DNA of 64,000 nucleotides from the IMG/VR virus record IMGVR_UViG_3300034072_000926, positions 186,001 through 250,000 of that record, one strand, 5' to 3'. Below are positions 28,491 to 42,471 of this stretch, in pieces. A program made the translations under genes and the position numbers. Under the pieces are notes generated by a model. It was not told the origin of the DNA and did no database searches. It worked only from the letters and a program-made list of their open reading frames with translations. Every line of letters starts with the position of its first letter. Position 1 is the stretch's first letter.

Positions 28491-29762
28491 TTAATGACTC
28501 TTAAAGTTTTTTATGACGAGATTGTCACCTTCGAACAAAATATCAGCCGAAGTTAATCGACCTCCTTTGCCGCAACCAGTGTCCATGAAATAGGCTTCTC
28601 CGCCGCCAGTTCCCTTTACAACCAGTGGCTTAAAGGTGTCCCTGATATCATGGCCGACCATCACTCGTTTACCCTGGGGGATCCTATTCACCCATTCGTA
28701 GATGCGTGTAGGGTAACCATCTGCCCTCGGCGGTGCCGAATTGTCAACTTCGCCAAAGAGAGCCATAGTCTCAAAGCGACCATTCAATCTTGCACTCCTG
28801 ATGTCAAACATCTCAGGTTCTGCTGCACCGTGTGTGAACAAAGTGTCGCCGATAATCCAGTGATGTCTGGAGAATCCGAGAAGTGCCTTGTAGCGATTCT
28901 CGAACTTCTTCCTTGCTTCGCTACTAAGTGCCTCAATGGCCGCAGTGGTGACCTTGTTGCCATCACTGAGACGAAGACGAACATCGTTGAATCGAACCTG
29001 TTCGAGCCAGCGCTCAATCTTACGTTCGTGGTTACCAATGAGACATACGCCGCGACCTCGAGTCACAACGTCATAGACGTGGTCTACACACTCAAGGGAA
29101 TTTGGTCCATAGTCCACAACATCTCCTAGGAAGACACAGAAGAGATTTCTCTGACTTGCCCACTCGGTTGCATTCTTGAGAGGCTCCAACATGCCATGAA
29201 CATCGCCGACGACCATCACTCCTCGGAAGCCACGAAACTCGATGGCCTTTTTGAGGTCATGATTGTCTAGCTTGGGAATGACCTGGAAATCATCCTTCCT
29301 TGTGTCAATGACATTGGCGATTGAATCGCCCCTGAGAATGTCTCGCTCGTTAGTTCGGAAAATGTGCTCATGCTTTGTGATTGCACCTGATGCACCTGCA
29401 CGCCAGCTTCTATTGGAATTAGACAGCTTTATATCGAGATCACGATTGCAGACGACGTAGAAGATAGGAACGCCGACTTTTGTTCCAATATCAGCAAGAG
29501 TCAGACGATCCTTTTTGCGGAGATTGGTTGCATCAACGACCACGCGCTCGCCAAGCTCTAGCTTCAGCTGGGTGCGACGATGAATCTCACGGAATACAGT
29601 ATCGTTGGCATCAAGACGCTGGTAGTCGCCTGTCAGCTCATAACGAATGTCTTCGCTGCTCATAACCTCATAGGGAGCGAACTTGAGATTGGACCAATAG
29701 GTTTTGCCACCGCCTGCGGGGCCGACCATAATGACCAGGCTATGGAGTGGAATCTTTTTCAT
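28491..29762 (-). CDS. Polynucleotide kinase-phosphatase (P-loop kinase + metallophosphoesterase; Pnkp-like, no ligase domain)
   Basis: GPAGGGKT and VVDATN (kinase); GDVHG, GDVVDYG, GNHE, GHD, DTG (phosphoesterase). Confidence 0.85.
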   Translation of the reverse strand: MKKIPLHSLVIMVGPAGGGKTYWSNLKFAPYEVMSSEDIRYELTGDYQRLDANDTVFREIHRRTQLKLELGERVVVDATNLRKKDRLTLADIGTKVGVPIFYVVCNRDLDIKLSNSNRSWRAGASGAITKHEHIFRTNERDILRGDSIANVIDTRKDDFQVIPKLDNHDLKKAIEFRGFRGVMVVGDVHGMLEPLKNATEWASQRNLFCVFLGDVVDYGPNSLECVDHVYDVVTRGRGVCLIGNHERKIERWLEQVRFNDVRLRLSDGNKVTTAAIEALSSEARKKFENRYKALLGFSRHHWIIGDTLFTHGAAEPEMFDIRSARLNGRFETMALFGEVDNSAPPRADGYPTRIYEWVNRIPQGKRVMVGHDIRDTFKPLVVKGTGGGEAYFMDTGCGKGGRLTSADILFEGDNLVIKNFKSH

Positions 29763-31420: not shown

Positions 31421-31879
31421 TCACTCCACTGCGCTGAAACGCTTGGTGATCGCATGTGCCTGTTCGCGGGTGCAAGGGCCAATACCCAGGGCAGTCACGA
31501 TGGGCGAACCATCGAACTCGGTGCCGGGGATAATGTGGTTCTTGTCCACGATGAGGGAAGTGATCAGACCAGCAGCCTGGGCCTCTTCGTAAGCGCGCTG
31601 GATAGCGGCTTCGTTCTTGGCCTTGAGGATGACTTGGGTGCCGATGAAGTCCGGGCCCTGGTAAACACGCAGGAGTTCCGGTTCGCGCCGACTAGCGAGA
31701 AGCACACAATTCTTGGCCGCATGACAAGCCTGGCTTGCCAGCTTACCGGGCTTCATAGCCAGGTCGCCTCGAATGATGCTATAGATGCGAAGCTTTTCAG
31801 AGGCAGCTTCGAAGGCCTCGTCGTCATTATCCGCTTCGTAGCGAGCAATGGCTTCCTACAAGAACGAGTTCGTCAGCAT
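31421..31879 (-). CDS. pth2: Peptidyl-tRNA hydrolase type 2 (Pth2) with in-frame amber codon at codon 8 (31856-31858)
   Basis: 'IIRGDLAMKPGKLASQACHAA...VILKA...LIVD...TALGIGP' is Pth2. The ORF-track start (31756) truncates the conserved first strand. The in-frame ATG at 31879 follows the RBS AGAAAGGA and reads MLTNSFL*EAIARYE. Confidence 0.8.
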
Positions 31880-32743: not shown

Positions 32744-33187
32744 TTAAATCAGTTCCTGATCGGCCGCAGCATTCAGAATACCGCGATAGACCCGCATGTT
32801 GGGACGATACGGTCCACTGGCGCTGAAATAGCGCATATCGTCCCCGTTGAAGATCTTGTCCAACGCAGCAGCGACCGCAGCACTCCTGCACTGTCCCATG
32901 AGACAATGAACGTATAAGACGCTCACATCCTTCTCTACCATTTCGTGATAGAAATCCAGGACTTGCTTGGCATGATCATCATCGAACAGGATACGGGTTT
33001 CCTCTTCGGGTTCCCCGTTCTTATACTGATCAATGTCGTGGAACTGTAGGTTCAGCCTACCCATGAGGTATTCATTCTCATGGATAGTGGGAAACTCGCC
33101 CTTCTCACAGATGCTGACTACTGCCCAAGGCTTCTCGGGCGGATTGGCAACTTCCATGATGGCTCGGCTATATACTACAAACTTCAT
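32744..33187 (-). CDS. Protein-tyrosine/dual-specificity phosphatase-like protein
   Basis: Cx5R motif HCLMGQCRSAAVA, plus 'FHDID' and 'PNMRV'. Confidence 0.8.
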   Translation of the reverse strand: MKFVVYSRAIMEVANPPEKPWAVVSICEKGEFPTIHENEYLMGRLNLQFHDIDQYKNGEPEEETRILFDDDHAKQVLDFYHEMVEKDVSVLYVHCLMGQCRSAAVAAALDKIFNGDDMRYFSASGPYRPNMRVYRGILNAAADQELI

Positions 33188-33537
33188 GCACCAGTTTTAT
33201 TCTGTTCTGGAGCACCTGTCAACTTCTTAAAAGCTTCGACTTCCCTGTCGAGAATTTCGAGAGCAATAGGAATATCTGCGCCTGCAACTCGAATGTCGAA
33301 AAAGCCCCAATGACATTCATCGTCGCCGTCCGAATCGTAGCACTGATATTCAGTGCCGGTCTTCTCGTCGAGGAAATGGTTATCCAGAGAATACCAGAGA
33401 TCTTCATCAATAGCACCGACTGGAATTTTGATGCGACATGTGAGCTCGATGATAGGTTTCTCGGCATCATGCACGAAAATCCAATCGGTCGGGACAACCA
33501 GCTTAGAATCCCGAACCAAGATCGCAAAGATGCTCAT
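33184..33537 (-). CDS. Hypothetical acidic protein
   Basis: ORF with ATGA overlaps on both sides. Confidence 0.55.
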   Translation of the reverse strand: MSIFAILVRDSKLVVPTDWIFVHDAEKPIIELTCRIKIPVGAIDEDLWYSLDNHFLDEKTGTEYQCYDSDGDDECHWGFFDIRVAGADIPIALEILDREVEAFKKLTGAPEQNKTGA

Positions 33538-34334
33538 TCGTCACTGCCATTTGCGTGACGAGTGACATGCAGAGCGTTATCGGCCTGATACTTCTCGACC
33601 TGCTGCCAATTGTAGATGCAGCGATCCAGACCGATGGCAATCTCGAGCACAAGTGCGTCCTTCTCAACAAGACCTTTCTTGCTCTGGAACTTCAGCTTCT
33701 CAGGGAAATCAGTTCGCAGGCTGATGCTGCAAACTTCCATCCACTTGTCACCGTTCCAGACTTCAACGTCCATCGTCTTCAGCGAATAGGCCGGCAGACG
33801 ATCCGACTCAACAAGACGGGTCGGTAAATGAACCATAGAGGCGATCATCTTCCGAACGGGTTCGAGGATCGCAGCATGATAGTCGTTCGCTGTGTCTGCA
33901 CTGTAGATGCACTGGAACTCTTGCTGGTAGAACTCCTTAAGGCGCATGTGCTTGGTCGGCTGCACGATTTCCCGACGGAAGCTCTTACCCGCCTGCCAAA
34001 CCACAAAGGGCGGGGAAACGCCAAGATGGTTGTTGAGCAGGTATTGCGCGTAGGCATAGCTACCGGGAGTGGTTTCGGGTCGCAGCGTCAACGGCGCTTC
34101 GCCGGACATGGCCGGGACCTGCTGATCCCATACATCCTCAGATGTGTAGTTGACATTGAGTAGATCACGCGGAGTGAGTAACGGGGCCTCGACGAAATGG
34201 AACTTCCACTGCGGGTTCAAGGCCAGCAATGCGTTTTGAATGGTCCGAGCAAAATAGTCCCGGAAGGTTTCGCGAAGGCGGATCTCTTCCTCATTCCAGA
34301 AGACCAGACCATTGATGTTATAGGGATTCTGCAT
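33534..34334 (-). CDS. Class II aminoacyl-tRNA synthetase catalytic domain, GlyRS (alpha2-type)-like, lacking an anticodon-binding domain
   Basis: LRPETT, QAGKSFRRE (motif 2), RLKEFYQQEFQ, PAYS..TMDVE, WMEVCSISLRTDF, VLEIAIGLDR (motif 3). The protein ends about 25 aa after motif 3. Likely start MQNPYN at 34334. Confidence 0.75.
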   Translation of the reverse strand: MQNPYNINGLVFWNEEEIRLRETFRDYFARTIQNALLALNPQWKFHFVEAPLLTPRDLLNVNYTSEDVWDQQVPAMSGEAPLTLRPETTPGSYAYAQYLLNNHLGVSPPFVVWQAGKSFRREIVQPTKHMRLKEFYQQEFQCIYSADTANDYHAAILEPVRKMIASMVHLPTRLVESDRLPAYSLKTMDVEVWNGDKWMEVCSISLRTDFPEKLKFQSKKGLVEKDALVLEIAIGLDRCIYNWQQVEKYQADNALHVTRHANGSDE

Positions 34335-34342
34335 AATGGGCC

Positions 34343-34852
34343 TTACTGGTTGAGAATGAAGATGAAGGAAACAACTGCCATCATAACACCGCCCCAGAAG
34401 AATGGGCTCTTCAGCAGCGCGGGCTTGATATCTGGGATAGCGATGGGTTCTGGTTCCGGCCTCGGTTCCCGAACATTTCTGAGCCCGAGGAAGGCTTGCC
34501 ATTCCCATTCCGAAGAAGGCCGGTCATTGTTGTTCGTACTAGCCGCACCAGCATAGCCGATATACAGGCCTTCGCTGGCCGCCCATGTCCTCAGCTCTTC
34601 CCATACGGGCTGATATGCAGATTTCTCATCTTCCATATCCCATCGAGAACCATAGCAGGGCATTTCGAAGAGATGCCGGATAGCCTTTGGGGCAGTCACT
34701 GGCGCATATTCACTGCCGTGCTTTACTGCCTCTTGTAGGGCTTCGAGCAAGGTGGACTTTACGAAGAACCGAAGGAGGTCTGCATTCTCCTTCAGTTCAT
34801 TATGGATGGCTTCGCGCTTGGTCTTGCGAAGATCATCTGCGAGCGTTGCCAT
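34343..34852 (-). CDS. Hypothetical protein with C-terminal transmembrane anchor
   Basis: Hydrophobic C-terminal 'PFFWGGVMMAVVSFIFIL'. Confidence 0.6.
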   Translation of the reverse strand: MATLADDLRKTKREAIHNELKENADLLRFFVKSTLLEALQEAVKHGSEYAPVTAPKAIRHLFEMPCYGSRWDMEDEKSAYQPVWEELRTWAASEGLYIGYAGAASTNNNDRPSSEWEWQAFLGLRNVREPRPEPEPIAIPDIKPALLKSPFFWGGVMMAVVSFIFILNQ

Positions 34853-36171
34853 TAGTCTTCAATCCTCAAGTGATCTGCCTTGTATTCAGCTTCGAAGACA
34901 TCCTTATAGGTTTTGATGATTAGAATCAATACCGCAGGATACAGGAAGGTGGACAGAAGGACATTGCCGACCACAATAGCCTCGAAGAGTTCCAGGTATT
35001 CAAAGTCCCTGGGAATCATATGCAACATGAGCAGCGAGAACGCACCCTTCACACCGGCAGCAGTCAATACCTTCCACCAATGCAGCGGGATGGTCACAAC
35101 TTTATCAGTCCGCTGACTCATCCAAGCAAACCCGCCCAACATGACCATTCGAATGATCGTCGAACCTACGAATACTGCCATGATCTCGCCCCAATACTTC
35201 ACAAGCAACTGGAGATTGATCAGATTAGCCATCGTAATGAACAAGACCGTCGAGGCAATGATTGCAATGAACTGGATGTTACCGATGACGACTTGATAGG
35301 CATAGGAATCCTTGATCATGTTGTCGAAACGAGGAATGATCTTCCCAATGGTCCGACCACGTTCGCCAGTGTCCTCAACAGCATTCTCGAGTTCACTCGA
35401 TAGTCGCTTGGTGATGATATTGTTGGCGAAGAGGATCGCAACGATAACAGCAAAGATGCCAGAAGCATGATAGTGTTCAGCAATCGCGAACGCGCCTAGG
35501 GCCATGAGCAGGACAATCATCGTCTCAGTCATTGCATCGTGGATATAACGCAGAGCAATAAGACCCACGTAACCAACGACCAGACCAATGCCAAGTGCGC
35601 CGACGACCATCTTGACCGCGTAGAGGGTGGGGTTATCCGCTACATGCTCGGGGCCATGACCCATATAGACTAGCGCGATACTGAATACAATCAGGGCACT
35701 TGCGTCGTTGAACAAACTCTCACCCTCTGCGAGGACTTTGAGATTGTGAGGCAAATGCGACCGACCGAACACCGCAGAGACCGAAACTGGATCCGTTGCA
35801 AGGATCATACAGAACAATGCTGCGACCGCCGGGGCCGTCAGATGGTAGTCAGGTAGAATGTGTCGATTGACCATGATTGCAAGGCCGACCGAAAGGACGA
35901 TCATAATGCCTGCAATGTAGAACAAGCTTAGGGCATTGCGCTTGAGCTCATCCCAGCGGAGCATCATAGCGTCAACGCATATCAGGATGGGAAGCATGAG
36001 GAAGACCAGATGGTCAAATGTTTGATCACTAATCTCGATGGGACGATGCCCGGAAAGTGAAACCAGAACCACCGAGGCGATAATTGTTATCGGGGTGGGA
36101 ACGCCTAGCTTTTGCTGGACGAAAAGAGCCGTAGCGGCTATGAGCACAACAAAGATAGCTAGTTCTAGCAT
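34852..36171 (-). CDS. CPA1-family Na+(K+)/H+ antiporter (NhaP-like)
   Basis: Many hydrophobic helices; ATDPVSV and EGESLFNDA motifs. Confidence 0.9.
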   Translation of the reverse strand: MLELAIFVVLIAATALFVQQKLGVPTPITIIASVVLVSLSGHRPIEISDQTFDHLVFLMLPILICVDAMMLRWDELKRNALSLFYIAGIMIVLSVGLAIMVNRHILPDYHLTAPAVAALFCMILATDPVSVSAVFGRSHLPHNLKVLAEGESLFNDASALIVFSIALVYMGHGPEHVADNPTLYAVKMVVGALGIGLVVGYVGLIALRYIHDAMTETMIVLLMALGAFAIAEHYHASGIFAVIVAILFANNIITKRLSSELENAVEDTGERGRTIGKIIPRFDNMIKDSYAYQVVIGNIQFIAIIASTVLFITMANLINLQLLVKYWGEIMAVFVGSTIIRMVMLGGFAWMSQRTDKVVTIPLHWWKVLTAAGVKGAFSLLMLHMIPRDFEYLELFEAIVVGNVLLSTFLYPAVLILIIKTYKDVFEAEYKADHLRIED

Positions 36172-36209
36172 CTACTTTCCTATTCTGTTTGACCTCATAA
36201 AATGTTGAG

Positions 36210-36282
36210 CGCGCCTAGCGAGGCTCGAACTCGCGACCCGCGGATTTAGAGTCCGCTGCTCTACCAACTGAGCTATAAGCGC
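36210..36282 (-). tRNA. Amber-suppressor tRNA (anticodon CUA), tRNA-Gly-like body, no encoded CCA
   Basis: Minus strand GCGCTTA-TA-GCTC-AGTTGGTA-GAGC-A-GCGGA-CTCTAAA-TCCGC-GGGTC-GCGAG-TTCGAGC-CTCGC-TAGGCGC-G gives a complete cloverleaf with a 7-nt loop CT-CTA-AA. Confidence 0.92.
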
Positions 36283-36293
36283 ATGTAACCTTT

Positions 36294-36752
36294 TTAGGAC
36301 TTATTCTCCAGCCTGTCAAGACGTTCCATGATTTCTCGGAGAAGTTCTACCTGCTCCCTGGATTGATTCTTGAGAAGTTCCTGTTCCTCGTGCGTGAATG
36401 CATCGCTGTTGACGATCAGATGTGCGGCAAACTTAGCCGTGATGATCGGTGCGATGATAAAGGTGCAAACGTGCATGAACACGCCTGCAAGAAACTTGCT
36501 CCAGGGATGCGTGGGAAACATATCCCCGTATCCAACAGTGGTCGCTGTCACGGTCGCCCACCAAAAGCTGTCAGTGATGTCCTTGCCTTCGATGAAGCTG
36601 AACATAAGAGCAGCTATGGTCATGATCAGGCCATATGCAATTGCAAGGCTTATGACCCGATTGAACAGTTTCTGCATCAGCGTCAATTCTTGACCAGCCC
36701 CGGCTGCGGCGGTCCACAAATCACTACCGGCTTGTTCGATCTTTCTACGCAT
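36294..36752 (-). CDS. Two-TM potassium channel (KcsA-like)
   Basis: Selectivity filter TATTVGYGD flanked by two TM helices. Confidence 0.9.
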   Translation of the reverse strand: MRRKIEQAGSDLWTAAAGAGQELTLMQKLFNRVISLAIAYGLIMTIAALMFSFIEGKDITDSFWWATVTATTVGYGDMFPTHPWSKFLAGVFMHVCTFIIAPIITAKFAAHLIVNSDAFTHEEQELLKNQSREQVELLREIMERLDRLENKS

Positions 36753-37408: not shown

Positions 37409-38758
37409 TTAGAGTTTCCTCCATTCGGTGCCGTGAACGCCATCGGCAAGCGCGATTCCTGCATCAGTAAGCTGCTGACGAATCTGATCCGCTCTCTCGT
37501 AATCTCGATTCGCACGAGCAGCTTGACGTGCCGCTATTAGCGACTCTACCCACACCTTGTCAACACCAAAGGTGCGCCACTGGTGAGGAGTTTGGTTAAA
37601 GAAACCAAGGAACTGAGCACATTTGATCAGTTGAGCCTTAGATTTTGCCTTTTCATTTCCACTTTCCAACGCATCAGCGAGTTCGTGGAGAATGGCAATA
37701 GCTTTGGTGGTATTCAGATCATGCTGGAGAGCATTCAGGAAATTCTCCGGCAGATCACAATCTTCGGCATAATTGACATCATCGTGCCGGTAGATCGTCT
37801 CATATAGACGATCCAACGACTTATAGGCCACATCCAGTTTCGACAATGTGAAGTCCATCGGACTACGATAATGTGACTGGAGGAAGAGATAACGAACTGC
37901 CTCGCCGGGATATTGCTCGACCAGCTCATTGAGGTAGATTACATTGCCCCGACTCTTCGACATCTTTTCGCTGTCGACGGTCAAAAGACCATTATGGATC
38001 CAGTTATTGGCCAGTGGCTTACCAATGGCGCAATGACTCTGAGCACATTCGGCTTCATGATGTGGAAAGCGAAGATCCTGTCCGCCGCCATGAATGTCGA
38101 TGGTCTGTTCATTAAACTCAGCAGCAATCATAGCTGAGCATTCAATATGCCAACCCGGTCGACCTTGACCCCAAGGACTATTCCACCAAGGCTCGCCCTC
38201 TTTTGCGGGCTTCCAGAGAATGAAGTCCCTTGGATCCTTTTTCTTTGGATCAACTTCGACTCGCGAACCACTTTCAAGGCTCTTGTGATTAGCAAGTCCA
38301 GGATGCGGGTTACTGGGAACATGGAAGAATACCTCACCCTTGCGGACATACGCATACTTCTGTTCAACGAGACGCTTAATTAGCGTCAGCATCCCTCTAA
38401 TGTTCTCTGTGGCTTTAGGCTCTACCGTTGGAGCCAAGCAATTGAGGGCAGCAAGGTCAGCGTGATATGCCTCGAGAGCCGGCTCGGTTATGGCCGAGAT
38501 ATCGACACCTTGCTCAATCGAAGCGTTGATGATCTTGTCATCAATATCCGTGACATTACGAGCATATCTGACTGCATTTTCACCATATGTATAGCGGAGC
38601 AATCGGAAGAGCTGGTCGAATACGATAGCGGGGCGAGCATTGCCAATGTGGGCCGGGCCATAAACGGTTGGTCCACAGACATACATGCTCACGTGATTTG
38701 GATCGAGCGGTGTGAACTCTCGCAGAGAACGCGACTGACTATCATAGAGTTTAATCAT
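37409..38758 (-). CDS. cysS: Cysteine--tRNA ligase
   Basis: CGPTVY, HIGN, GRPGWHIECSAM, DIHGGGQDLRFPHH, KMSKS. Confidence 0.95.
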   Translation of the reverse strand: MIKLYDSQSRSLREFTPLDPNHVSMYVCGPTVYGPAHIGNARPAIVFDQLFRLLRYTYGENAVRYARNVTDIDDKIINASIEQGVDISAITEPALEAYHADLAALNCLAPTVEPKATENIRGMLTLIKRLVEQKYAYVRKGEVFFHVPSNPHPGLANHKSLESGSRVEVDPKKKDPRDFILWKPAKEGEPWWNSPWGQGRPGWHIECSAMIAAEFNEQTIDIHGGGQDLRFPHHEAECAQSHCAIGKPLANNWIHNGLLTVDSEKMSKSRGNVIYLNELVEQYPGEAVRYLFLQSHYRSPMDFTLSKLDVAYKSLDRLYETIYRHDDVNYAEDCDLPENFLNALQHDLNTTKAIAILHELADALESGNEKAKSKAQLIKCAQFLGFFNQTPHQWRTFGVDKVWVESLIAARQAARANRDYERADQIRQQLTDAGIALADGVHGTEWRKL

Positions 38759-39193: not shown

Positions 39194-39531
39194 CGTCCAC
39201 CCATCTGAAGTTTGAACATCAATGCACTATTGGGATCAGTGAATCGAACCCGAATAATGCAAGGATCTTCTTTAAGAAAAGAATAGCTTTTTGCGGGATA
39301 GACATCAAAGATGTATGATCCCTTTGCATTGTCTTTCAGCCACTCCTCTAGATCTTCGCCATTTGCATTGAAGAAGCTGCACTCGTTATTCCGACGTCTT
39401 GGACAGAGAAAGGTCTTGATTGTTCCTCCACGAACAATCGCTTCGGTCCAGGGCTTGAAGACTTTATGGAGACTGAACAAACGCAGATGCATCTTTGTGA
39501 TATGAACGTCTGTGTAGCGTCTAAATATCAT
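39190..39531 (-). CDS. Small 'FKL-tail' family protein
   Basis: LEEWLKDN...FTDPNSALMFKLQMGG. Confidence 0.6.
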   Translation of the reverse strand: MIFRRYTDVHITKMHLRLFSLHKVFKPWTEAIVRGGTIKTFLCPRRRNNECSFFNANGEDLEEWLKDNAKGSYIFDVYPAKSYSFLKEDPCIIRVRFTDPNSALMFKLQMGGR

Positions 39532-40354
39532 CCCCGAGATATTCCTTCAATGCAGCGGCACTGATTCCCTTGACAACCTTCTCCAGATCACAAGCGTAGA
39601 GACCAGCACAACTGAAACCATTCAGTTCGACCAGTTTAGCACCATTATCCGTAAGAGCAACATCACAGGTGTAGGCAATGTCAACTTGCCAAGGATGTTC
39701 TGCCACCTTCTGTGCTAGTTCTTCACATTCGGGGAGCCAATCACGACGAATGTCTAGTTTTCCATCCCAGCGATATTCAGAACCGGCAATGATCTTGCCA
39801 TCTGCGATTACAAAACGAAACTCGCCCTGGATATTCCTCAACGGAGCCATGAAGCAAAGGGTGTCGTTCATAACACCGCTAGTCTGTTCGAGTGTAGAGA
39901 TGTCATGGTCCACATTCTCGGACACCATACGCTGTCCGGCAAATGTCTTGTAACCACTATTGGGGCGAACGAACACCCCATTTGGACTCTGGTGGATTAT
40001 GAAATCTTTGACACGTTCTTTGAACATGGCCCAGGTCAAGAACTGTCCATCCGAATTCATGAACCAATCGAGTGGCAGATTGCTCATGTAGGAAGTAACC
40101 TGCGTGTTCAGGTTTACCCCGAGAGGACCAGGCTGTATCTTTGGAGACTGGACAGCTTTTACGAATTGATGAGAGCCATACATGACCACACACTTATTCT
40201 CAAGACCAGGTGGTTCACTATAGGTGCCATCGTCGTGACGATCGACAAAGATCACTTCGTGCCCAGCCGCCTGTGCATAGTGATCGATGGTATGGCGGTC
40301 ATACGAGAGTTTCTCGAGAATGCCGCGGTCTAAGAGCCAGATAACAGGAGCCAT
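39521..40354 (-). CDS. ATP-grasp domain protein (R2K/DUF4343-like)
   Basis: 'FVRPNSGYKTFAG', 'EFRFVIADGKII', 'CDVA...LVELNGFSCAGLY'. Confidence 0.75.
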   Translation of the reverse strand: MAPVIWLLDRGILEKLSYDRHTIDHYAQAAGHEVIFVDRHDDGTYSEPPGLENKCVVMYGSHQFVKAVQSPKIQPGPLGVNLNTQVTSYMSNLPLDWFMNSDGQFLTWAMFKERVKDFIIHQSPNGVFVRPNSGYKTFAGQRMVSENVDHDISTLEQTSGVMNDTLCFMAPLRNIQGEFRFVIADGKIIAGSEYRWDGKLDIRRDWLPECEELAQKVAEHPWQVDIAYTCDVALTDNGAKLVELNGFSCAGLYACDLEKVVKGISAAALKEYLGDDI

Positions 40355-41265: not shown

Positions 41266-42471
41266 TTATTCCGTATCCTTTGCGTCCCTCAAGGCATACC
41301 AGCTTTGGCCGCCCCAAAGATGACGGATATTATCCACTTTGCCTTGACTGGAAAGGCTATTTCCTACGAGGTTGACCAAATACTCGTAGAGGCTAGCCTC
41401 TCCTTCTTCTAGGTGATCCCACATCCAGAACTTCACACCATTGGTGATCTTGTCTGAACCCTGAAGGTTCTTCTCCGCAAACTTCTTTTTGCTACCGTTG
41501 AAGTTGTCGAAGTCGGCCTGAACCTCCCAGTAGAGATCACTTGCAAGCTTCTTAAGGCTTTCGAAGATTATTTTGCCAAATGTCTCGGTCTTCTCGATGA
41601 GATCCTCAGGCAAGAATGGCTTTGCGTCATCGAGCTTGTTCTCAATGATTAAGCGAATGACATCCTTCTCAAGGGTTAGATGCTCAAGCGTCTTATGAAG
41701 CTGAGAATACCATTCGCCCTTGAGCTTCAGCATCGTGCCATCGGCCCAACGGAAGACGTCGCCTTCCTCGCCCTCTAGCGCACGAATCTCCTCAATGACT
41801 TCCTCGTCAAAGCCTTCCAGTTCATAGGAGAAGCTGCATACAGGAATACCATATGCCTCAGCTTCTTCCTTGAGCATCGGAGCATTCATATACTCACCGG
41901 ATTCGTTCTCACGAAGCGCAGTTAGGATCAGACTGGTCACTGGATAGTCGATGACGATACGCTGAATGCGCGAGCACCATTCGAAGATTGGTGTCCAACC
42001 CTGGCTCATCCAATACTTACAGAACTCGTGATACTCAACTTTGTCCGCTGCCCAGGTATCCACAGGAGCAGCAACTCCGGTCAAACCCATCTTGGTGCAG
42101 AAACGAACACTACCGTCAATCAACAGAGGAGTGATCATCGAACCATCGAGCTTCTTGAAGCGACGGTATGGCGAATCCCAATCCACGGCCGAAATCTGAG
42201 TCTCAGGACGCTCTCCAAGATTGAAGAACTTGTGATATTTGCGTGACAGCACCTTGCCCGTAGCGGTATCGAAGGTAATACCACGACACTCGCGAAGGAT
42301 AGCGGTGCGCTCATCGACTACCGGAGGGAAGGTATCCTCAAAATTAACGAGATAGTTGATTACCGTGTAGCCGTGCTCTTCATCGACCTTAACAACGAAC
42401 TCGTCCCGGCCTTCAATCGCACTGAGCACTTGATTGATGTGAGTGATGCGAGGAAAGGTATAGGCAGTCAT
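41266..42471 (-). CDS. RNA ligase 1 (T4 Rnl1-like)
   Basis: 'ECRGITF', 'KFFNLGE', motif I KKLDGSMI, 'TPIFE', 'EG', 'KLKGEWY'. Confidence 0.9.
   Translation of the reverse strand: MTAYTFPRITHINQVLSAIEGRDEFVVKVDEEHGYTVINYLVNFEDTFPPVVDERTAILRECRGITFDTATGKVLSRKYHKFFNLGERPETQISAVDWDSPYRRFKKLDGSMITPLLIDGSVRFCTKMGLTGVAAPVDTWAADKVEYHEFCKYWMSQGWTPIFEWCSRIQRIVIDYPVTSLILTALRENESGEYMNAPMLKEEAEAYGIPVCSFSYELEGFDEEVIEEIRALEGEEGDVFRWADGTMLKLKGEWYSQLHKTLEHLTLEKDVIRLIIENKLDDAKPFLPEDLIEKTETFGKIIFESLKKLASDLYWEVQADFDNFNGSKKKFAEKNLQGSDKITNGVKFWMWDHLEEGEASLYEYLVNLVGNSLSSQGKVDNIRHLWGGQSWYALRDAKDTE

What the first reader, a model, noticed from the sequence alone, without database searches (positions are those of the whole stretch)
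33534..34334. Minimal GlyRS-like synthetase with only the catalytic domain
Seen: about 266 aa with motifs matching alpha2-type GlyRS (LRPET, GKSFRxE, R.KEF.Q.E, Y in PAYS, RTDF, LE...GLDR). The acidic glycine-pocket residues appear retained, with Ala where Ser is usual in motif 3. The C-terminal anticodon domain and the insertion domains are missing. Alphaproteobacteria normally use the unrelated alpha2beta2 GlyRS, so this is unlikely to be a simple host capture. Alternative role: an aaRS paralogue that ligates an amino acid to a protein or carrier, as EpmA and amino acid:carrier-protein ligases do.
Basis: partly seen in the sequence, partly recalled or inferred. Interest (0 to 1): 0.75.

Follow-up and report, generated by a model that had tools for sequence, protein, structure and literature searches.

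The report
Stand-alone GlyRS-like catalytic core in jumbo phage
A giant phage carries a 266-residue enzyme that is only the catalytic core of a glycyl-tRNA synthetase; it belongs to a large, unstudied family found in huge phages and in about half of Rhizobium species, and it probably activates glycine, but what it loads the glycine onto is not settled.

Summary
Window 33537-34334 (-), stop at 33534-33536, encodes a 266-aa class II synthetase core.

By sequence profile and by predicted fold its nearest relatives are the dimeric (alpha2) GlyRSs. The anticodon-binding domain and insertion 1 are absent, and no HGTP anticodon domain was found anywhere in the 465-kb phage genome.

It is not a one-off:
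- About 1,800 relatives were found, nearly all 220-290 aa.
- They occur in jumbo and huge phages (Sinorhizobium, Caulobacter, Brevundimonas and Xanthomonas phages, and metagenomes).
- One tight bacterial clade (Rhizobium, Agrobacterium, Devosia, Phenylobacterium and others) carries it; RefSeq calls it 'aminoacyl--tRNA ligase-related protein'.
- The four bacterial genomes checked also have the canonical GlyQ.

Twenty positions are invariant across 61 diverse members, including the ATP-binding arginines and the three glutamates of the glycine pocket. The enzyme is therefore very probably active.

No protein neighbour is conserved, and the phage has no carrier-protein or Mom gene. The gene sits within 500 bp of a tRNA in 22 of 76 phage loci. 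In this window it lies among CysRS, PTH2, an RNA ligase and a tRNA(CUA).

Best reading (about 0.45): an anticodon-blind glycine-tRNA ligase that reads only the acceptor stem. A non-tRNA acceptor remains a serious rival (about 0.3). I class it as a new variant of a known kind.

The parts
33534..34334 (-). CDS of the stand-alone GlyRS-like class II catalytic core (266 aa plus TGA stop; protein P0001)
   Evidence: The stop overlaps the next gene's ATG (ATGA).
34167..34205 (-). Motif 1 region (residues 44-56, KFHFVEAPLLTPR), the class II dimer-interface motif
   Evidence: Family alignment A1: E49 is at least 90% conserved and the consensus is xExPxLxP. Coordinates.
34068..34085 (-). LRPETT strand (residues 84-89), carrying the first glutamate of the glycine pocket (E87)
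   Evidence: T88 and T89 are invariant; L84, R85 and E87 are at least 90% conserved. It aligns to LRPETAQG of Mycobacterium GlyRS.
33912..33989 (-). Motif 2 (residues 116-141): R120 and E122, a loop of the same length as in GlyRS, then F135, Q137 and E139
   Evidence: Ungapped alignment to [24 protein letters not shown] of GlyRS. S118, R120, E122, F135, Q137 and E139 are invariant.
33705..33797 (-). LPAYS..T.D.E and E..S.S.RTDF strands (residues 180-210) of the active-site sheet
   Evidence: P181, Y183, D189, E200, S203, R207 and D209 are invariant. The segment aligns to LSHYAERTVDIEY...GELEGIANRTDFD of GlyRS.
33621..33647 (-). Motif 3 (residues 230-238, LEIAIGLDR): E231, A233 where GlyRS has Ser, and R238
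   Evidence: E231, D237 and R238 are invariant; A233 and G235 are at least 90% conserved. The structural alignment runs through this helix.
36209..36282 (-). tRNA with anticodon CUA (amber-suppressor type). It lies upstream on the same strand. This position is conserved in the window's phage clade; a link to the enzyme is not shown.
37409..38758 (-). Full-length cysteinyl-tRNA synthetase in the same minus-strand gene run (context only)
   Evidence: NCBIfam cysS scores 467 bits, above its cut-off of 340. It is syntenic with the gene in 15 loci.
31421..31756 (-). PTH2-type peptidyl-tRNA hydrolase (context only)
   Evidence: Pfam PF01981, E 3.4e-16. It lies near the gene in 13 loci.
41266..42471 (-). 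T4 RnlA-type RNA ligase (context only; tRNA repair)
   Evidence: Pfam PF09511, E 1.6e-30. It lies near the gene in 13 loci, including Caulobacter phage CcrSC.

Best explanation
The gene encodes a stand-alone class II synthetase core descended from dimeric (alpha2) GlyRS.

What is shown:
- It has the GlyRS fold and the GlyRS active-site signature.
- It lacks insertion 1 and the anticodon-binding domain.
- It belongs to a large family under strong purifying selection at the catalytic positions.

What is inferred:
- It dimerises through motif 1 and makes glycyl-adenylate from glycine and ATP.
- It recognises that tRNA only through the acceptor stem and discriminator (G1:C72, C2:G71, G3:C70, U73), with no reading of the anticodon.
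- In the phage this would keep its own and the host's tRNA-Gly charged independently of the host's unrelated GlyQS enzyme. It would be part of a translation and tRNA-maintenance gene set that also includes CysRS, SerRS, PTH2, an RNA ligase, a PNK-like enzyme and 58 tRNAs.

My sub-probabilities:
- GlyRS-derived core: 0.95
- Active in amino-acid adenylation: 0.8
- The amino acid is glycine: 0.6
- The acceptor is tRNA: about 0.45-0.5
For: GlyRS ancestry:
- The best NCBIfam hit is glycine--tRNA ligase (60.6 bits; hisS follows at 35).
- The family profile hits alpha2 GlyRS at E 2e-19. ProRS is at 9e-7, PylRS at 1e-5 and SerRS at 2e-5.
- Foldseek and VIA-align both rank GlyRS first (Z 22-24; other class IIa enzymes reach about 21).

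An active enzyme:
- Twenty columns are invariant in 61 sequences that share only 30-50% identity.
- They include R120 (motif 2), R238 (motif 3), F135 and E139. E87 is at least 90% conserved and E231 is invariant.
- Their spacing matches the Glu188/Arg220/Phe235/Glu239/Glu359/Ser361/Arg366 set of T. thermophilus GlyRS. I take those numbers from my knowledge of Arnez et al. 1999.
- The motif 2 loop, which contacts the acceptor end in class II enzymes, has exactly the GlyRS length.

tRNA context:
- The gene is within 500 bp of a tRNA in 22 of 76 dereplicated phage loci. In this genome only 5.8% of positions are that close to a tRNA.
- It is within 10 kb of a tRNA in 43 of 80 loci, almost always on the same strand, and often inside a tRNA array.
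- tRNA-Gly makes up 11 of 51 tRNAs within 500 bp, against 26 of 272 farther away (Fisher p 0.03).
- The window's neighbours are CysRS, PTH2, an RnlA-type ligase and a PNK-like enzyme.
- The combination G1-C2-G3 plus U73 is unique to four tRNA-Gly among the phage's 58 tRNAs.

Other points:
- No protein neighbour is conserved, so the acceptor must be something every host cell supplies.
- The phage has no GlyQ of its own.
- There is a precedent for an anticodon-domain-less synthetase that still charges tRNA: CysRS* with selC* tRNA-Cys (PMC5389517).
Against: - No activity was measured, and nothing here shows tRNA binding.
- C35 and C36 in the anticodon are major tRNA-Gly identity elements and are read by the domain that is missing (textbook knowledge).
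- The bacterial members sit in genomes that already have GlyQS. They have no adjacent tRNA in 9 of the 10 loci scanned (one Phenylobacterium locus has a tRNA-Ala just downstream on the opposite strand). The gene is accessory: 86 of 173 Rhizobium species carry it, and several copies are decayed. A plain second GlyRS is not obviously useful there.
- In some contigs the neighbours point to small-molecule or DNA-modification chemistry: an L-amino-acid-ligase-type ATP-grasp, a methyltransferase and TAGT.
- tRNA arrays occupy several regions of these genomes, and the loci are phylogenetically related, so the proximity statistics overstate independence.
- Ser to Ala in motif 3 leaves the exact amino-acid specificity open.
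Confidence: 0.45

Rival explanations
1. It is an amino-acid ligase with a non-tRNA acceptor. The core still makes glycyl-adenylate (or adenylate of another small amino acid) but passes it to something else. Candidates are a host protein (as EpmA does to EF-P), the phosphopantetheine arm of a carrier protein (as the alphaproteobacterial aa:CP ligases do), a small molecule (as MshC does), or a modified DNA base or sugar.
For: - Several known synthetase paralogues without an anticodon domain work this way (established knowledge).
- The B. japonicum glycine:carrier-protein ligase is a close structural match of similar size (Z 20.7, 297 aa).
- The bacterial clade lives beside a full GlyQS, has a nearby tRNA in only 1 of the 10 loci scanned, and is accessory.
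- In contigs L009-L011 the gene directly follows an L-amino-acid-ligase-type ATP-grasp, with no intergenic gap, and precedes a methyltransferase, TAGT and a sugar epimerase.
- An R2K ATP-grasp lies 5 kb upstream in this window and in phage Phosso.
Against: - The phage genome has no PP-binding domain.
- No protein neighbour is conserved in 89 loci, whereas aa:CP ligases sit next to their carrier gene.
- Sequence and fold are closest to GlyRS, not to methanogen-type SerRS or LysRS.
- The motif 2 loop keeps the full GlyRS length.
- The gene is strongly associated with tRNA arrays in phages.
Confidence: 0.3
2. It is the dedicated synthetase of the neighbouring amber-suppressor tRNA(CUA). Having no anticodon domain, the enzyme would ignore the CUA anticodon and load glycine, giving phage-controlled read-through of UAG.
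For: - A tRNA(CUA) lies upstream on the same strand in this window. In seven of the closest IMG/VR relatives (L016-L022) and in phage Phosso it sits about 50-1100 bp upstream.
- The window's copy has G1:C72, C2:G71 and G3:C70, like tRNA-Gly.
- An anticodon-domain-less CysRS* paired with an opal suppressor is a precedent (PMC5389517).
Against: - The linkage is confined to one clade. Other clades have other tRNAs or none next to the gene, and the bacterial sister clade has no suppressor tRNA nearby.
- The acceptor stems of the orthologous tRNA(CUA) genes are not conserved and are not Gly-like. Only G73 is constant, and that is not a glycine discriminator.
- The genome shows no sign that TAG is read as sense. 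TAG ends 112 of 522 long ORFs, and there is no excess of long ORF pairs split by a TAG.
Confidence: 0.07
3. It makes a nucleotide product rather than loading an acceptor. The core would use its adenylate chemistry to produce Ap4A-type dinucleoside polyphosphates or another adenylylated signal, acting in phage-host conflict.
For: - Human GlyRS synthesises Ap4A; structure 2ZT5 (GlyRS in complex with Ap4A) is among the top structural matches.
- In Labrys, Agrobacterium and Roseibium the gene is a lone cargo gene in mobile islands, with resolvases, IS elements, DUF3987 and PcfJ nearby.
- NAD-salvage genes recur nearby in phages: NadM-like in 14 loci, and NadR plus PnuC in XbC2.
Against: - The glycine-pocket glutamates are conserved as strongly as the ATP site, which direct ATP condensation would not need.
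- There is no hit in PADLOC.
- No effector or sensor gene is linked to it.
Confidence: 0.07
4. It is a non-catalytic relic or regulatory subunit, comparable to HisZ or POLG2, or a decaying gene fragment.
For: It scores far below the curated GlyRS cut-offs (60.6 against 312 bits). POLG2 is among the fold matches (Z 20.2).
Against: - All catalytic residues are invariant across a family that has diverged to about 30% identity.
- The length is uniform at 220-290 aa in hundreds of clusters.
- The model is confident (pLDDT 94).
Confidence: 0.03

Closest known systems
Dimeric (alpha2) glycyl-tRNA synthetase, e.g. Mycobacterium GlyRS (PDB 8sld, 8u2p) and Thermus thermophilus GlyRS (1ati, 1b76)
   Same: It has the class II catalytic fold and GlyRS is the best match by profile and by structure. 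It keeps LRPET, FR.E, a motif 2 loop of equal length, REF.Q.E, RTDF and E.x.G.DR. The three pocket glutamates and both ATP-binding arginines are conserved.
   Different: About 90 residues of catalytic-domain insertions, including insertion 1, and the whole C-terminal anticodon-binding domain are missing. Ser is replaced by Ala in motif 3. Identity is only 18-23%. It fails the curated full-length models.
RefSeq 'aminoacyl--tRNA ligase-related protein' of Rhizobium, Agrobacterium, Shinella, Devosia and Phenylobacterium (uncharacterised)
   Same: It is the same family, 57-62% identical, with the same length and motifs. It forms the sister clade to this phage's clade.
   Different: It is chromosomal or on mobile islands and is usually not next to tRNA genes. 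The four genomes checked also carry GlyQ. It is found in 86 of 173 Rhizobium species, with some decayed copies.
Amino acid:[carrier protein] ligases of Alphaproteobacteria (Bll0957, PDB 3mf1 and 4h2s; Atu2573)
   Same: It is an anticodon-domain-less class II core of similar size that activates glycine or alanine, found in the same bacterial groups. The fold is similar (Z 20.5-20.7).
   Different: Those enzymes derive from methanogen-type SerRS, have a zinc site and are encoded next to their carrier protein (established knowledge). Here the ancestry is GlyRS, no cysteine is invariant, the phage has no PP-binding gene and no neighbour is conserved.
Anticodon-domain-less synthetases that still charge tRNA: CysRS* with selC* tRNA-Cys(UCA) (PMC5389517) and PylRS forms that consist of the catalytic domain only
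   Same: These show that a synthetase without an anticodon reader can work and can be paired with suppressor tRNAs. PylRS cores have the same size range and give weak profile hits (E 1e-5).
   Different: They belong to different synthetase families. No dedicated tRNA partner is conserved with this family outside one clade.

Membership tests
alpha2-type glycyl-tRNA synthetase (class IIa GlyRS) | Class II catalytic fold with motifs 1, 2 and 3 | tested here: met
   Pfam PF00587 scores 37.6 bits, above its cut-off of 29.3. The AF2 model has pLDDT 94. GlyRS is the top match by Foldseek and by VIA-align at Z 22-24.
alpha2-type glycyl-tRNA synthetase (class IIa GlyRS) | GlyRS active-site signature: three pocket glutamates, the motif 2 and motif 3 arginines, and Ser in E-x-S-x-G-x-D-R | tested here: inconclusive
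   E87, E139, E231, R120 and R238 are conserved or invariant with GlyRS spacing, but the Ser position is Ala233 in at least 90% of members. The mapping to T. thermophilus residue numbers rests on my recall of Arnez et al. 1999, not on a superposition with ligand.
alpha2-type glycyl-tRNA synthetase (class IIa GlyRS) | Score above the curated whole-protein cut-offs of the GlyRS models | tested here: not met
   NF003211 scores 60.6 bits against a cut-off of 312. TIGR00389 scores 34.4 against 243.3.
alpha2-type glycyl-tRNA synthetase (class IIa GlyRS) | C-terminal HGTP-type anticodon-binding domain | tested here: not met
   The protein ends about 20 residues after motif 3. PF03129 was not found anywhere in the genome, while it rang in 14 of 14 control genomes. 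None of the best 150 relatives exceeds 352 aa, too short to add an anticodon domain.
alpha2-type glycyl-tRNA synthetase (class IIa GlyRS) | Insertion domain between motif 1 and motif 2 (insertion 1) | tested here: not met
   The model's 257 residues align across residues 18-354 of the GlyRS chain, with about 90 residues of the chain unmatched. A few relatives do carry a 60-75-aa insert at that exact site.
alpha2-type glycyl-tRNA synthetase (class IIa GlyRS) | Glycylation of tRNA-Gly | not testable with these tools
   The complex prediction with tRNA was not folded by the tool. An enzyme assay is needed.
Amino acid:[carrier protein] ligase | Adjacent carrier-protein gene with a phosphopantetheine attachment domain | tested here: not met
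   PF00550 was not found in the phage genome. No protein neighbour is conserved upstream or downstream in 89 loci.
Amino acid:[carrier protein] ligase | Descent from methanogen-type SerRS with an active-site zinc triad | tested here: not met
   The profile gives GlyRS at E 2e-19 and SerRS at 2e-5. C142 and C202 are not among the invariant or 90% conserved columns.
EpmA/PoxA (EF-P lysyl ligase) | LysRS-type class IIb core (Pfam tRNA-synt_2) | tested here: not met
   P0001 has no PF00152 hit. The best structural relatives are class IIa enzymes.
HisZ-type non-catalytic paralogue | Loss of the catalytic residues | tested here: not met
   The motif 2 and motif 3 arginines and the pocket glutamates are invariant or at least 90% conserved.

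The most novel reading that the evidence does not exclude
The family is a natural synthetase of about 240 residues that ignores the anticodon. In this phage clade it would work as a pair with the adjacent tRNA(CUA), loading glycine onto an amber suppressor. The phage would then carry its own self-contained stop-codon read-through module, made from the smallest known class II synthetase.
Probability: 0.07. Interest if true: 0.9.

Novelty: new variant of a known kind. Interest (0 to 1): 0.6.

Why it matters
If the protein charges tRNA, it would be among the smallest natural class II synthetases. It would work from acceptor-stem information alone. That bears on three questions:
- how much of a synthetase is needed to keep the code (the 'operational RNA code' and the urzyme debate);
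- how giant phages free their translation from host enzymes or from host tRNA-targeting defences;
- the search for compact orthogonal synthetase/tRNA pairs.

If it loads glycine onto something else, it defines a new GlyRS-derived ligase. That ligase would be spread over hundreds of phage lineages and half of the Rhizobium species.

Either way, the family is large, conserved and carries only a generic name, and my searches of the held library found no paper on it. A simple enzyme assay would settle the main question.

Tried and rejected
- **Complex prediction.** I submitted two copies of the protein with phage tRNA-Gly(GCC). The tool did not fold it and gives no verdict for RNA partners, so it is no evidence either way.
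- **Separate anticodon-domain gene.** PF03129 was not found in the genome.
- **Carrier protein.** PF00550 was not found.
- **Mom-type DNA glycylation.** This pathway uses Gly-tRNA-Gly (PMC13219725). Neither phage Mu Mom nor Pfam PF25680 finds anything in the genome.
- **TAG recoding.** There is no signal. TAG ends 112 of 522 long ORFs. Long same-frame ORF pairs split by a single stop number 14 for TAG, 14 for TGA and 22 for TAA.
- **Kinship of the tRNA(CUA).** No clear relation to tRNA-Gly or to any other phage tRNA (best about 70% identity to several), and the acceptor stems of its orthologues vary.
- **Conserved partner gene.** All-against-all comparison of ORFs in 89 loci found none. The immediately upstream and downstream ORFs are unrelated between clades.
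- **Defence-system libraries.** No PADLOC hit. PHROGs gave only a weak hit to a family of unknown function.
- **Motif 3 fragment search.** A search of the PDB with residues 196-250 alone returned nothing.
- **Inserts.** Pfam on the insert-bearing relatives found no domain in the inserts.
- **Literature.** Eight searches found no paper on this family. The jumbo-phage review PMC7824862 does not mention it.
- **Megablast.** A 10-kb piece of the window found no near-identical isolate phage.
Full report
**Where the window lies.** The window is bases 186,001-250,000 of a 465,259-bp virus record (49% GC, CheckV completeness 100%), that is, a jumbo phage. The genome carries 58 tRNA genes. Five are tRNA-Gly and two have a CUA anticodon. 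ORF statistics fit the standard code.

**The observation.** The ORF on the minus strand codes from 34334 down to 33537, with a TGA stop at 33534-33536, giving 266 aa.
- An in-frame upstream extension overlaps the preceding gene. The ATG at 34334 follows that gene's stop by 8 nt and matches the N-termini of the homologues.
- The stop overlaps the ATG of the next gene, so the gene sits in a tight minus-strand operon.

**What it resembles.**
- Pfam gives the class II core domain G/H/P/S/T at 37.6 bits, above its cut-off.
- NCBIfam ranks glycine--tRNA ligase first at 60.6 bits, far below the full-length cut-off of 312.
- The single sequence hits Mycobacterium GlyRS in the PDB at E 1e-9.
- A profile of 61 family members hits alpha2 GlyRS at E 2e-19. 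ProRS, PylRS, SerRS and HisRS follow at 1e-6 to 1e-4.
- In these alignments the segment from GKSFR to EFQ is ungapped against GlyRS, so the motif 2 loop has the GlyRS length.
- An AlphaFold2 model built on the family alignment is confident (pLDDT 94, pTM 0.90).
- Foldseek and VIA-align both put GlyRS structures first (Z 22-24, 18-23% identity). Other class IIa synthetases come next at Z about 21, then the B. japonicum glycine:carrier-protein ligase (20.7) and POLG2 (20.2).
- The model's 257 ordered residues span residues 18-354 of the Mycobacterium chain. About 90 residues of GlyRS insertions and the whole anticodon-binding domain are therefore missing.
- PF03129 finds nothing anywhere in the phage genome but rings in 14 of 14 control genomes.

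**The family.**
- The word-indexed search found 1,840 relatives at E <= 0.001. The listed ones are nearly all 245-300 aa and many sit on contigs of 200-950 kb.
- The exhaustive search over 50%-identity representatives found 168 clusters at E <= 1e-10. The best 150 are almost all 210-290 aa or fragments, and none exceeds 352 aa.
- Isolate phages with a copy include Sinorhizobium phage Phosso (63% identity), Xanthomonas phage XbC2 (48%), five Brevundimonas phages and a dozen Caulobacter Bertelyvirus-type phages (about 41%). Their annotations vary from 'hypothetical' to 'serine-tRNA synthetase'.
- In an alignment of 61 diverse members (30-50% identity to the query) twenty columns are invariant: T88, T89, P109, Q114, S118, R120, E122, F135, Q137, E139, P181, Y183, D189, E200, S203, R207, D209, E231, D237 and R238. 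E87, R131 and A233 are at least 90% conserved.
- By motif spacing these correspond to the ATP-binding arginines, the adenine-stacking Phe and the three glutamates of the GlyRS 'negatively charged pit'. The residue numbers for T. thermophilus come from my recall of Arnez et al. 1999.
- The usual Ser of motif 3 is Ala throughout the family.
- A few members carry a 60-75-aa insert exactly where GlyRS has insertion 1. Pfam sees no domain in it.

**Bacterial members.**
- A scan of one genome per species found the same short protein (57-62% identical) in many Rhizobium species and in Shinella, Labrys, Devosia and Phenylobacterium. The protein-database search added Agrobacterium and Roseibium.
- RefSeq names it 'aminoacyl--tRNA ligase-related protein'.
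- In Rhizobium it is a lone gene in an ordinary chromosomal neighbourhood, with Mla-type ABC transport genes, a GGDEF protein and a D-Ala-D-Ala carboxypeptidase.
- In Labrys, Agrobacterium and Roseibium it lies among resolvases, IS elements, DUF3987 and PcfJ.
- It is present in 86 of 173 Rhizobium species genomes, and several copies are broken.
- The four genomes checked have GlyQ and no full-length alpha2 GlyRS. The phage has no GlyQ.
- In a maximum-likelihood tree the bacterial copies form one clade (SH-aLRT 100). It is sister to the window's phage clade (97) and nested within phage diversity. The tree is midpoint-rooted, so the direction of transfer is not proven.

**Context in phages.**
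- In the window the minus-strand run reads as follows: RnlA-type RNA ligase; R2K ATP-grasp; CysRS; a potassium-channel-like protein; tRNA(CUA); a Na+/H+ exchanger; a 169-aa protein; the GlyRS-like core; a 117-aa protein; a phosphatase-like protein; PTH2; and, further on, a PNK-like kinase/phosphoesterase.
- Phosso shows the same order without the two transporters.
- Across 80 IMG/VR loci plus isolates, no protein neighbour is conserved beyond the window's own clade. The ORFs immediately upstream and downstream are unrelated between clades.
- What does recur is tRNA. 43 of 80 loci have tRNAs within 10 kb, almost always on the same strand, and 22 of 76 dereplicated loci have one within 500 bp. 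In this genome only 5.8% of positions are that close.
- tRNA-Gly is the commonest tRNA near the gene: 11 of 51 within 500 bp against 26 of 272 farther away, p 0.03.
- These figures are inflated by relatedness among the loci and by the several tRNA clusters these genomes hold.
- In the phage's own tRNA set, G1-C2-G3 with U73 is found only in four tRNA-Gly.

**The tRNA(CUA).**
- In the window's clade a tRNA(CUA) lies about 50-1100 bp upstream of the gene.
- Its discriminator G73 is constant, but the acceptor stems vary and are not Gly-like.
- It has no clear parent among the phage tRNAs.
- The genome shows no TAG recoding.
- A dedicated pair is therefore possible but weakly supported. The precedent is the anticodon-domain-less CysRS* with an opal suppressor (PMC5389517).

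**Other checks.**
- No Mom homologue, although Mom uses Gly-tRNA-Gly (PMC13219725).
- No PP-binding domain.
- No PADLOC hit.
- The same genome has full-length SerRS and CysRS that pass their curated cut-offs. It also has a second truncated class IIa core, HisRS-like, 147 aa, inside the main tRNA array.
- The literature searches found no study of this family.
- The complex prediction with tRNA was not run by the tool.

**Verdict.** Amino-acid activation, most likely of glycine, is well supported by conservation. The acceptor is not established.
- tRNA-Gly read through its acceptor stem fits the phage context best (about 0.45).
- A non-tRNA acceptor is the main rival (about 0.3). The bacterial copies living beside GlyQS favour it.
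- I class the finding as a new variant of a known kind, with interest 0.6.

Noticed in passing
outside the window: genome C1:3559-4002 (-), = L003:1435-1878 (-): A second truncated class IIa synthetase core, HisRS-like and 147 aa (open frame 181 aa). It has motif 2, the GGGRY motif and motif 3, but lacks the N-terminal motif 1 region, the insertion and the anticodon domain. It lies inside the main tRNA array, about 1.5 kb from tRNA-His. NCBIfam hisS scores 125 bits against a cut-off of 287. Two domain-stripped synthetases in one phage suggests a wider phenomenon.
   Followed up: partly
window 36209-36282 (-) and genome C1:441571-441647 (-): Two tRNA genes with a CUA (amber-suppressor) anticodon in a genome that shows no sign of TAG recoding. 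Copies orthologous to the window's tRNA keep G73 but have varied acceptor stems. Which enzyme charges them and what they are for is unknown.
   Followed up: partly
window 34852-36171 (-) and 36294-36752 (-): A phage-encoded Na+/H+ exchanger (439 aa) and a small potassium-channel-like protein (152 aa, with a TVGYGD filter). Compared with phage Phosso, they are inserted in the interval between CysRS and the GlyRS-like gene, one on either side of the tRNA(CUA).
   Followed up: no
window 41266-42471 (-), 28491-29762 (-), 31421-31756 (-): An RNA-repair and translation-rescue set on the same strand: a T4 RnlA-type RNA ligase, a kinase plus metallophosphoesterase protein (PNK-like), and an archaeal/eukaryotic-type peptidyl-tRNA hydrolase PTH2.
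   Followed up: no
window 39521-40354 (-): An R2K-clade ATP-grasp protein (277 aa), a family predicted to ligate amino acids to proteins. It is also present upstream of the gene in phage Phosso.
   Followed up: no
L009:1050-5093, L010, L011 (metagenome contigs carrying relative P0125): Here the GlyRS-like gene directly follows, with no intergenic gap, an L-amino-acid-ligase-type ATP-grasp. It is followed by a 49-aa ORF, a 395-aa methyltransferase, a TET-associated glycosyltransferase (TAGT) and a sugar epimerase/dehydratase. This looks like a modification cluster.
   Followed up: no
L008:1086-3688 (CcrSC), L006:1-1453 (XbC2) and 13 further loci: NAD-salvage genes recur a few kb upstream of the gene in several phage clades: NadM-type NMNAT/ADP-ribose pyrophosphatase with NAMPT, or NadR with PnuC. 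An isochorismatase-family gene lies downstream in Rhizobium and Agrobacterium. This may be shared synteny of accessory genes rather than a functional link.
   Followed up: partly
L098, L099 (contigs of 16-21 kb binned into proteobacterial MAGs): Their GlyRS-like proteins group with the phage clade rather than with the bacterial clade in the tree. These contigs are probably phage DNA mis-binned into MAGs.
   Followed up: no
window 32744-33187 (-): A 147-aa protein with an HCxxGxxRS motif and a weak dual-specificity phosphatase hit. Its counterpart in phage Phosso is annotated as tyrosine phosphatase.
   Followed up: no
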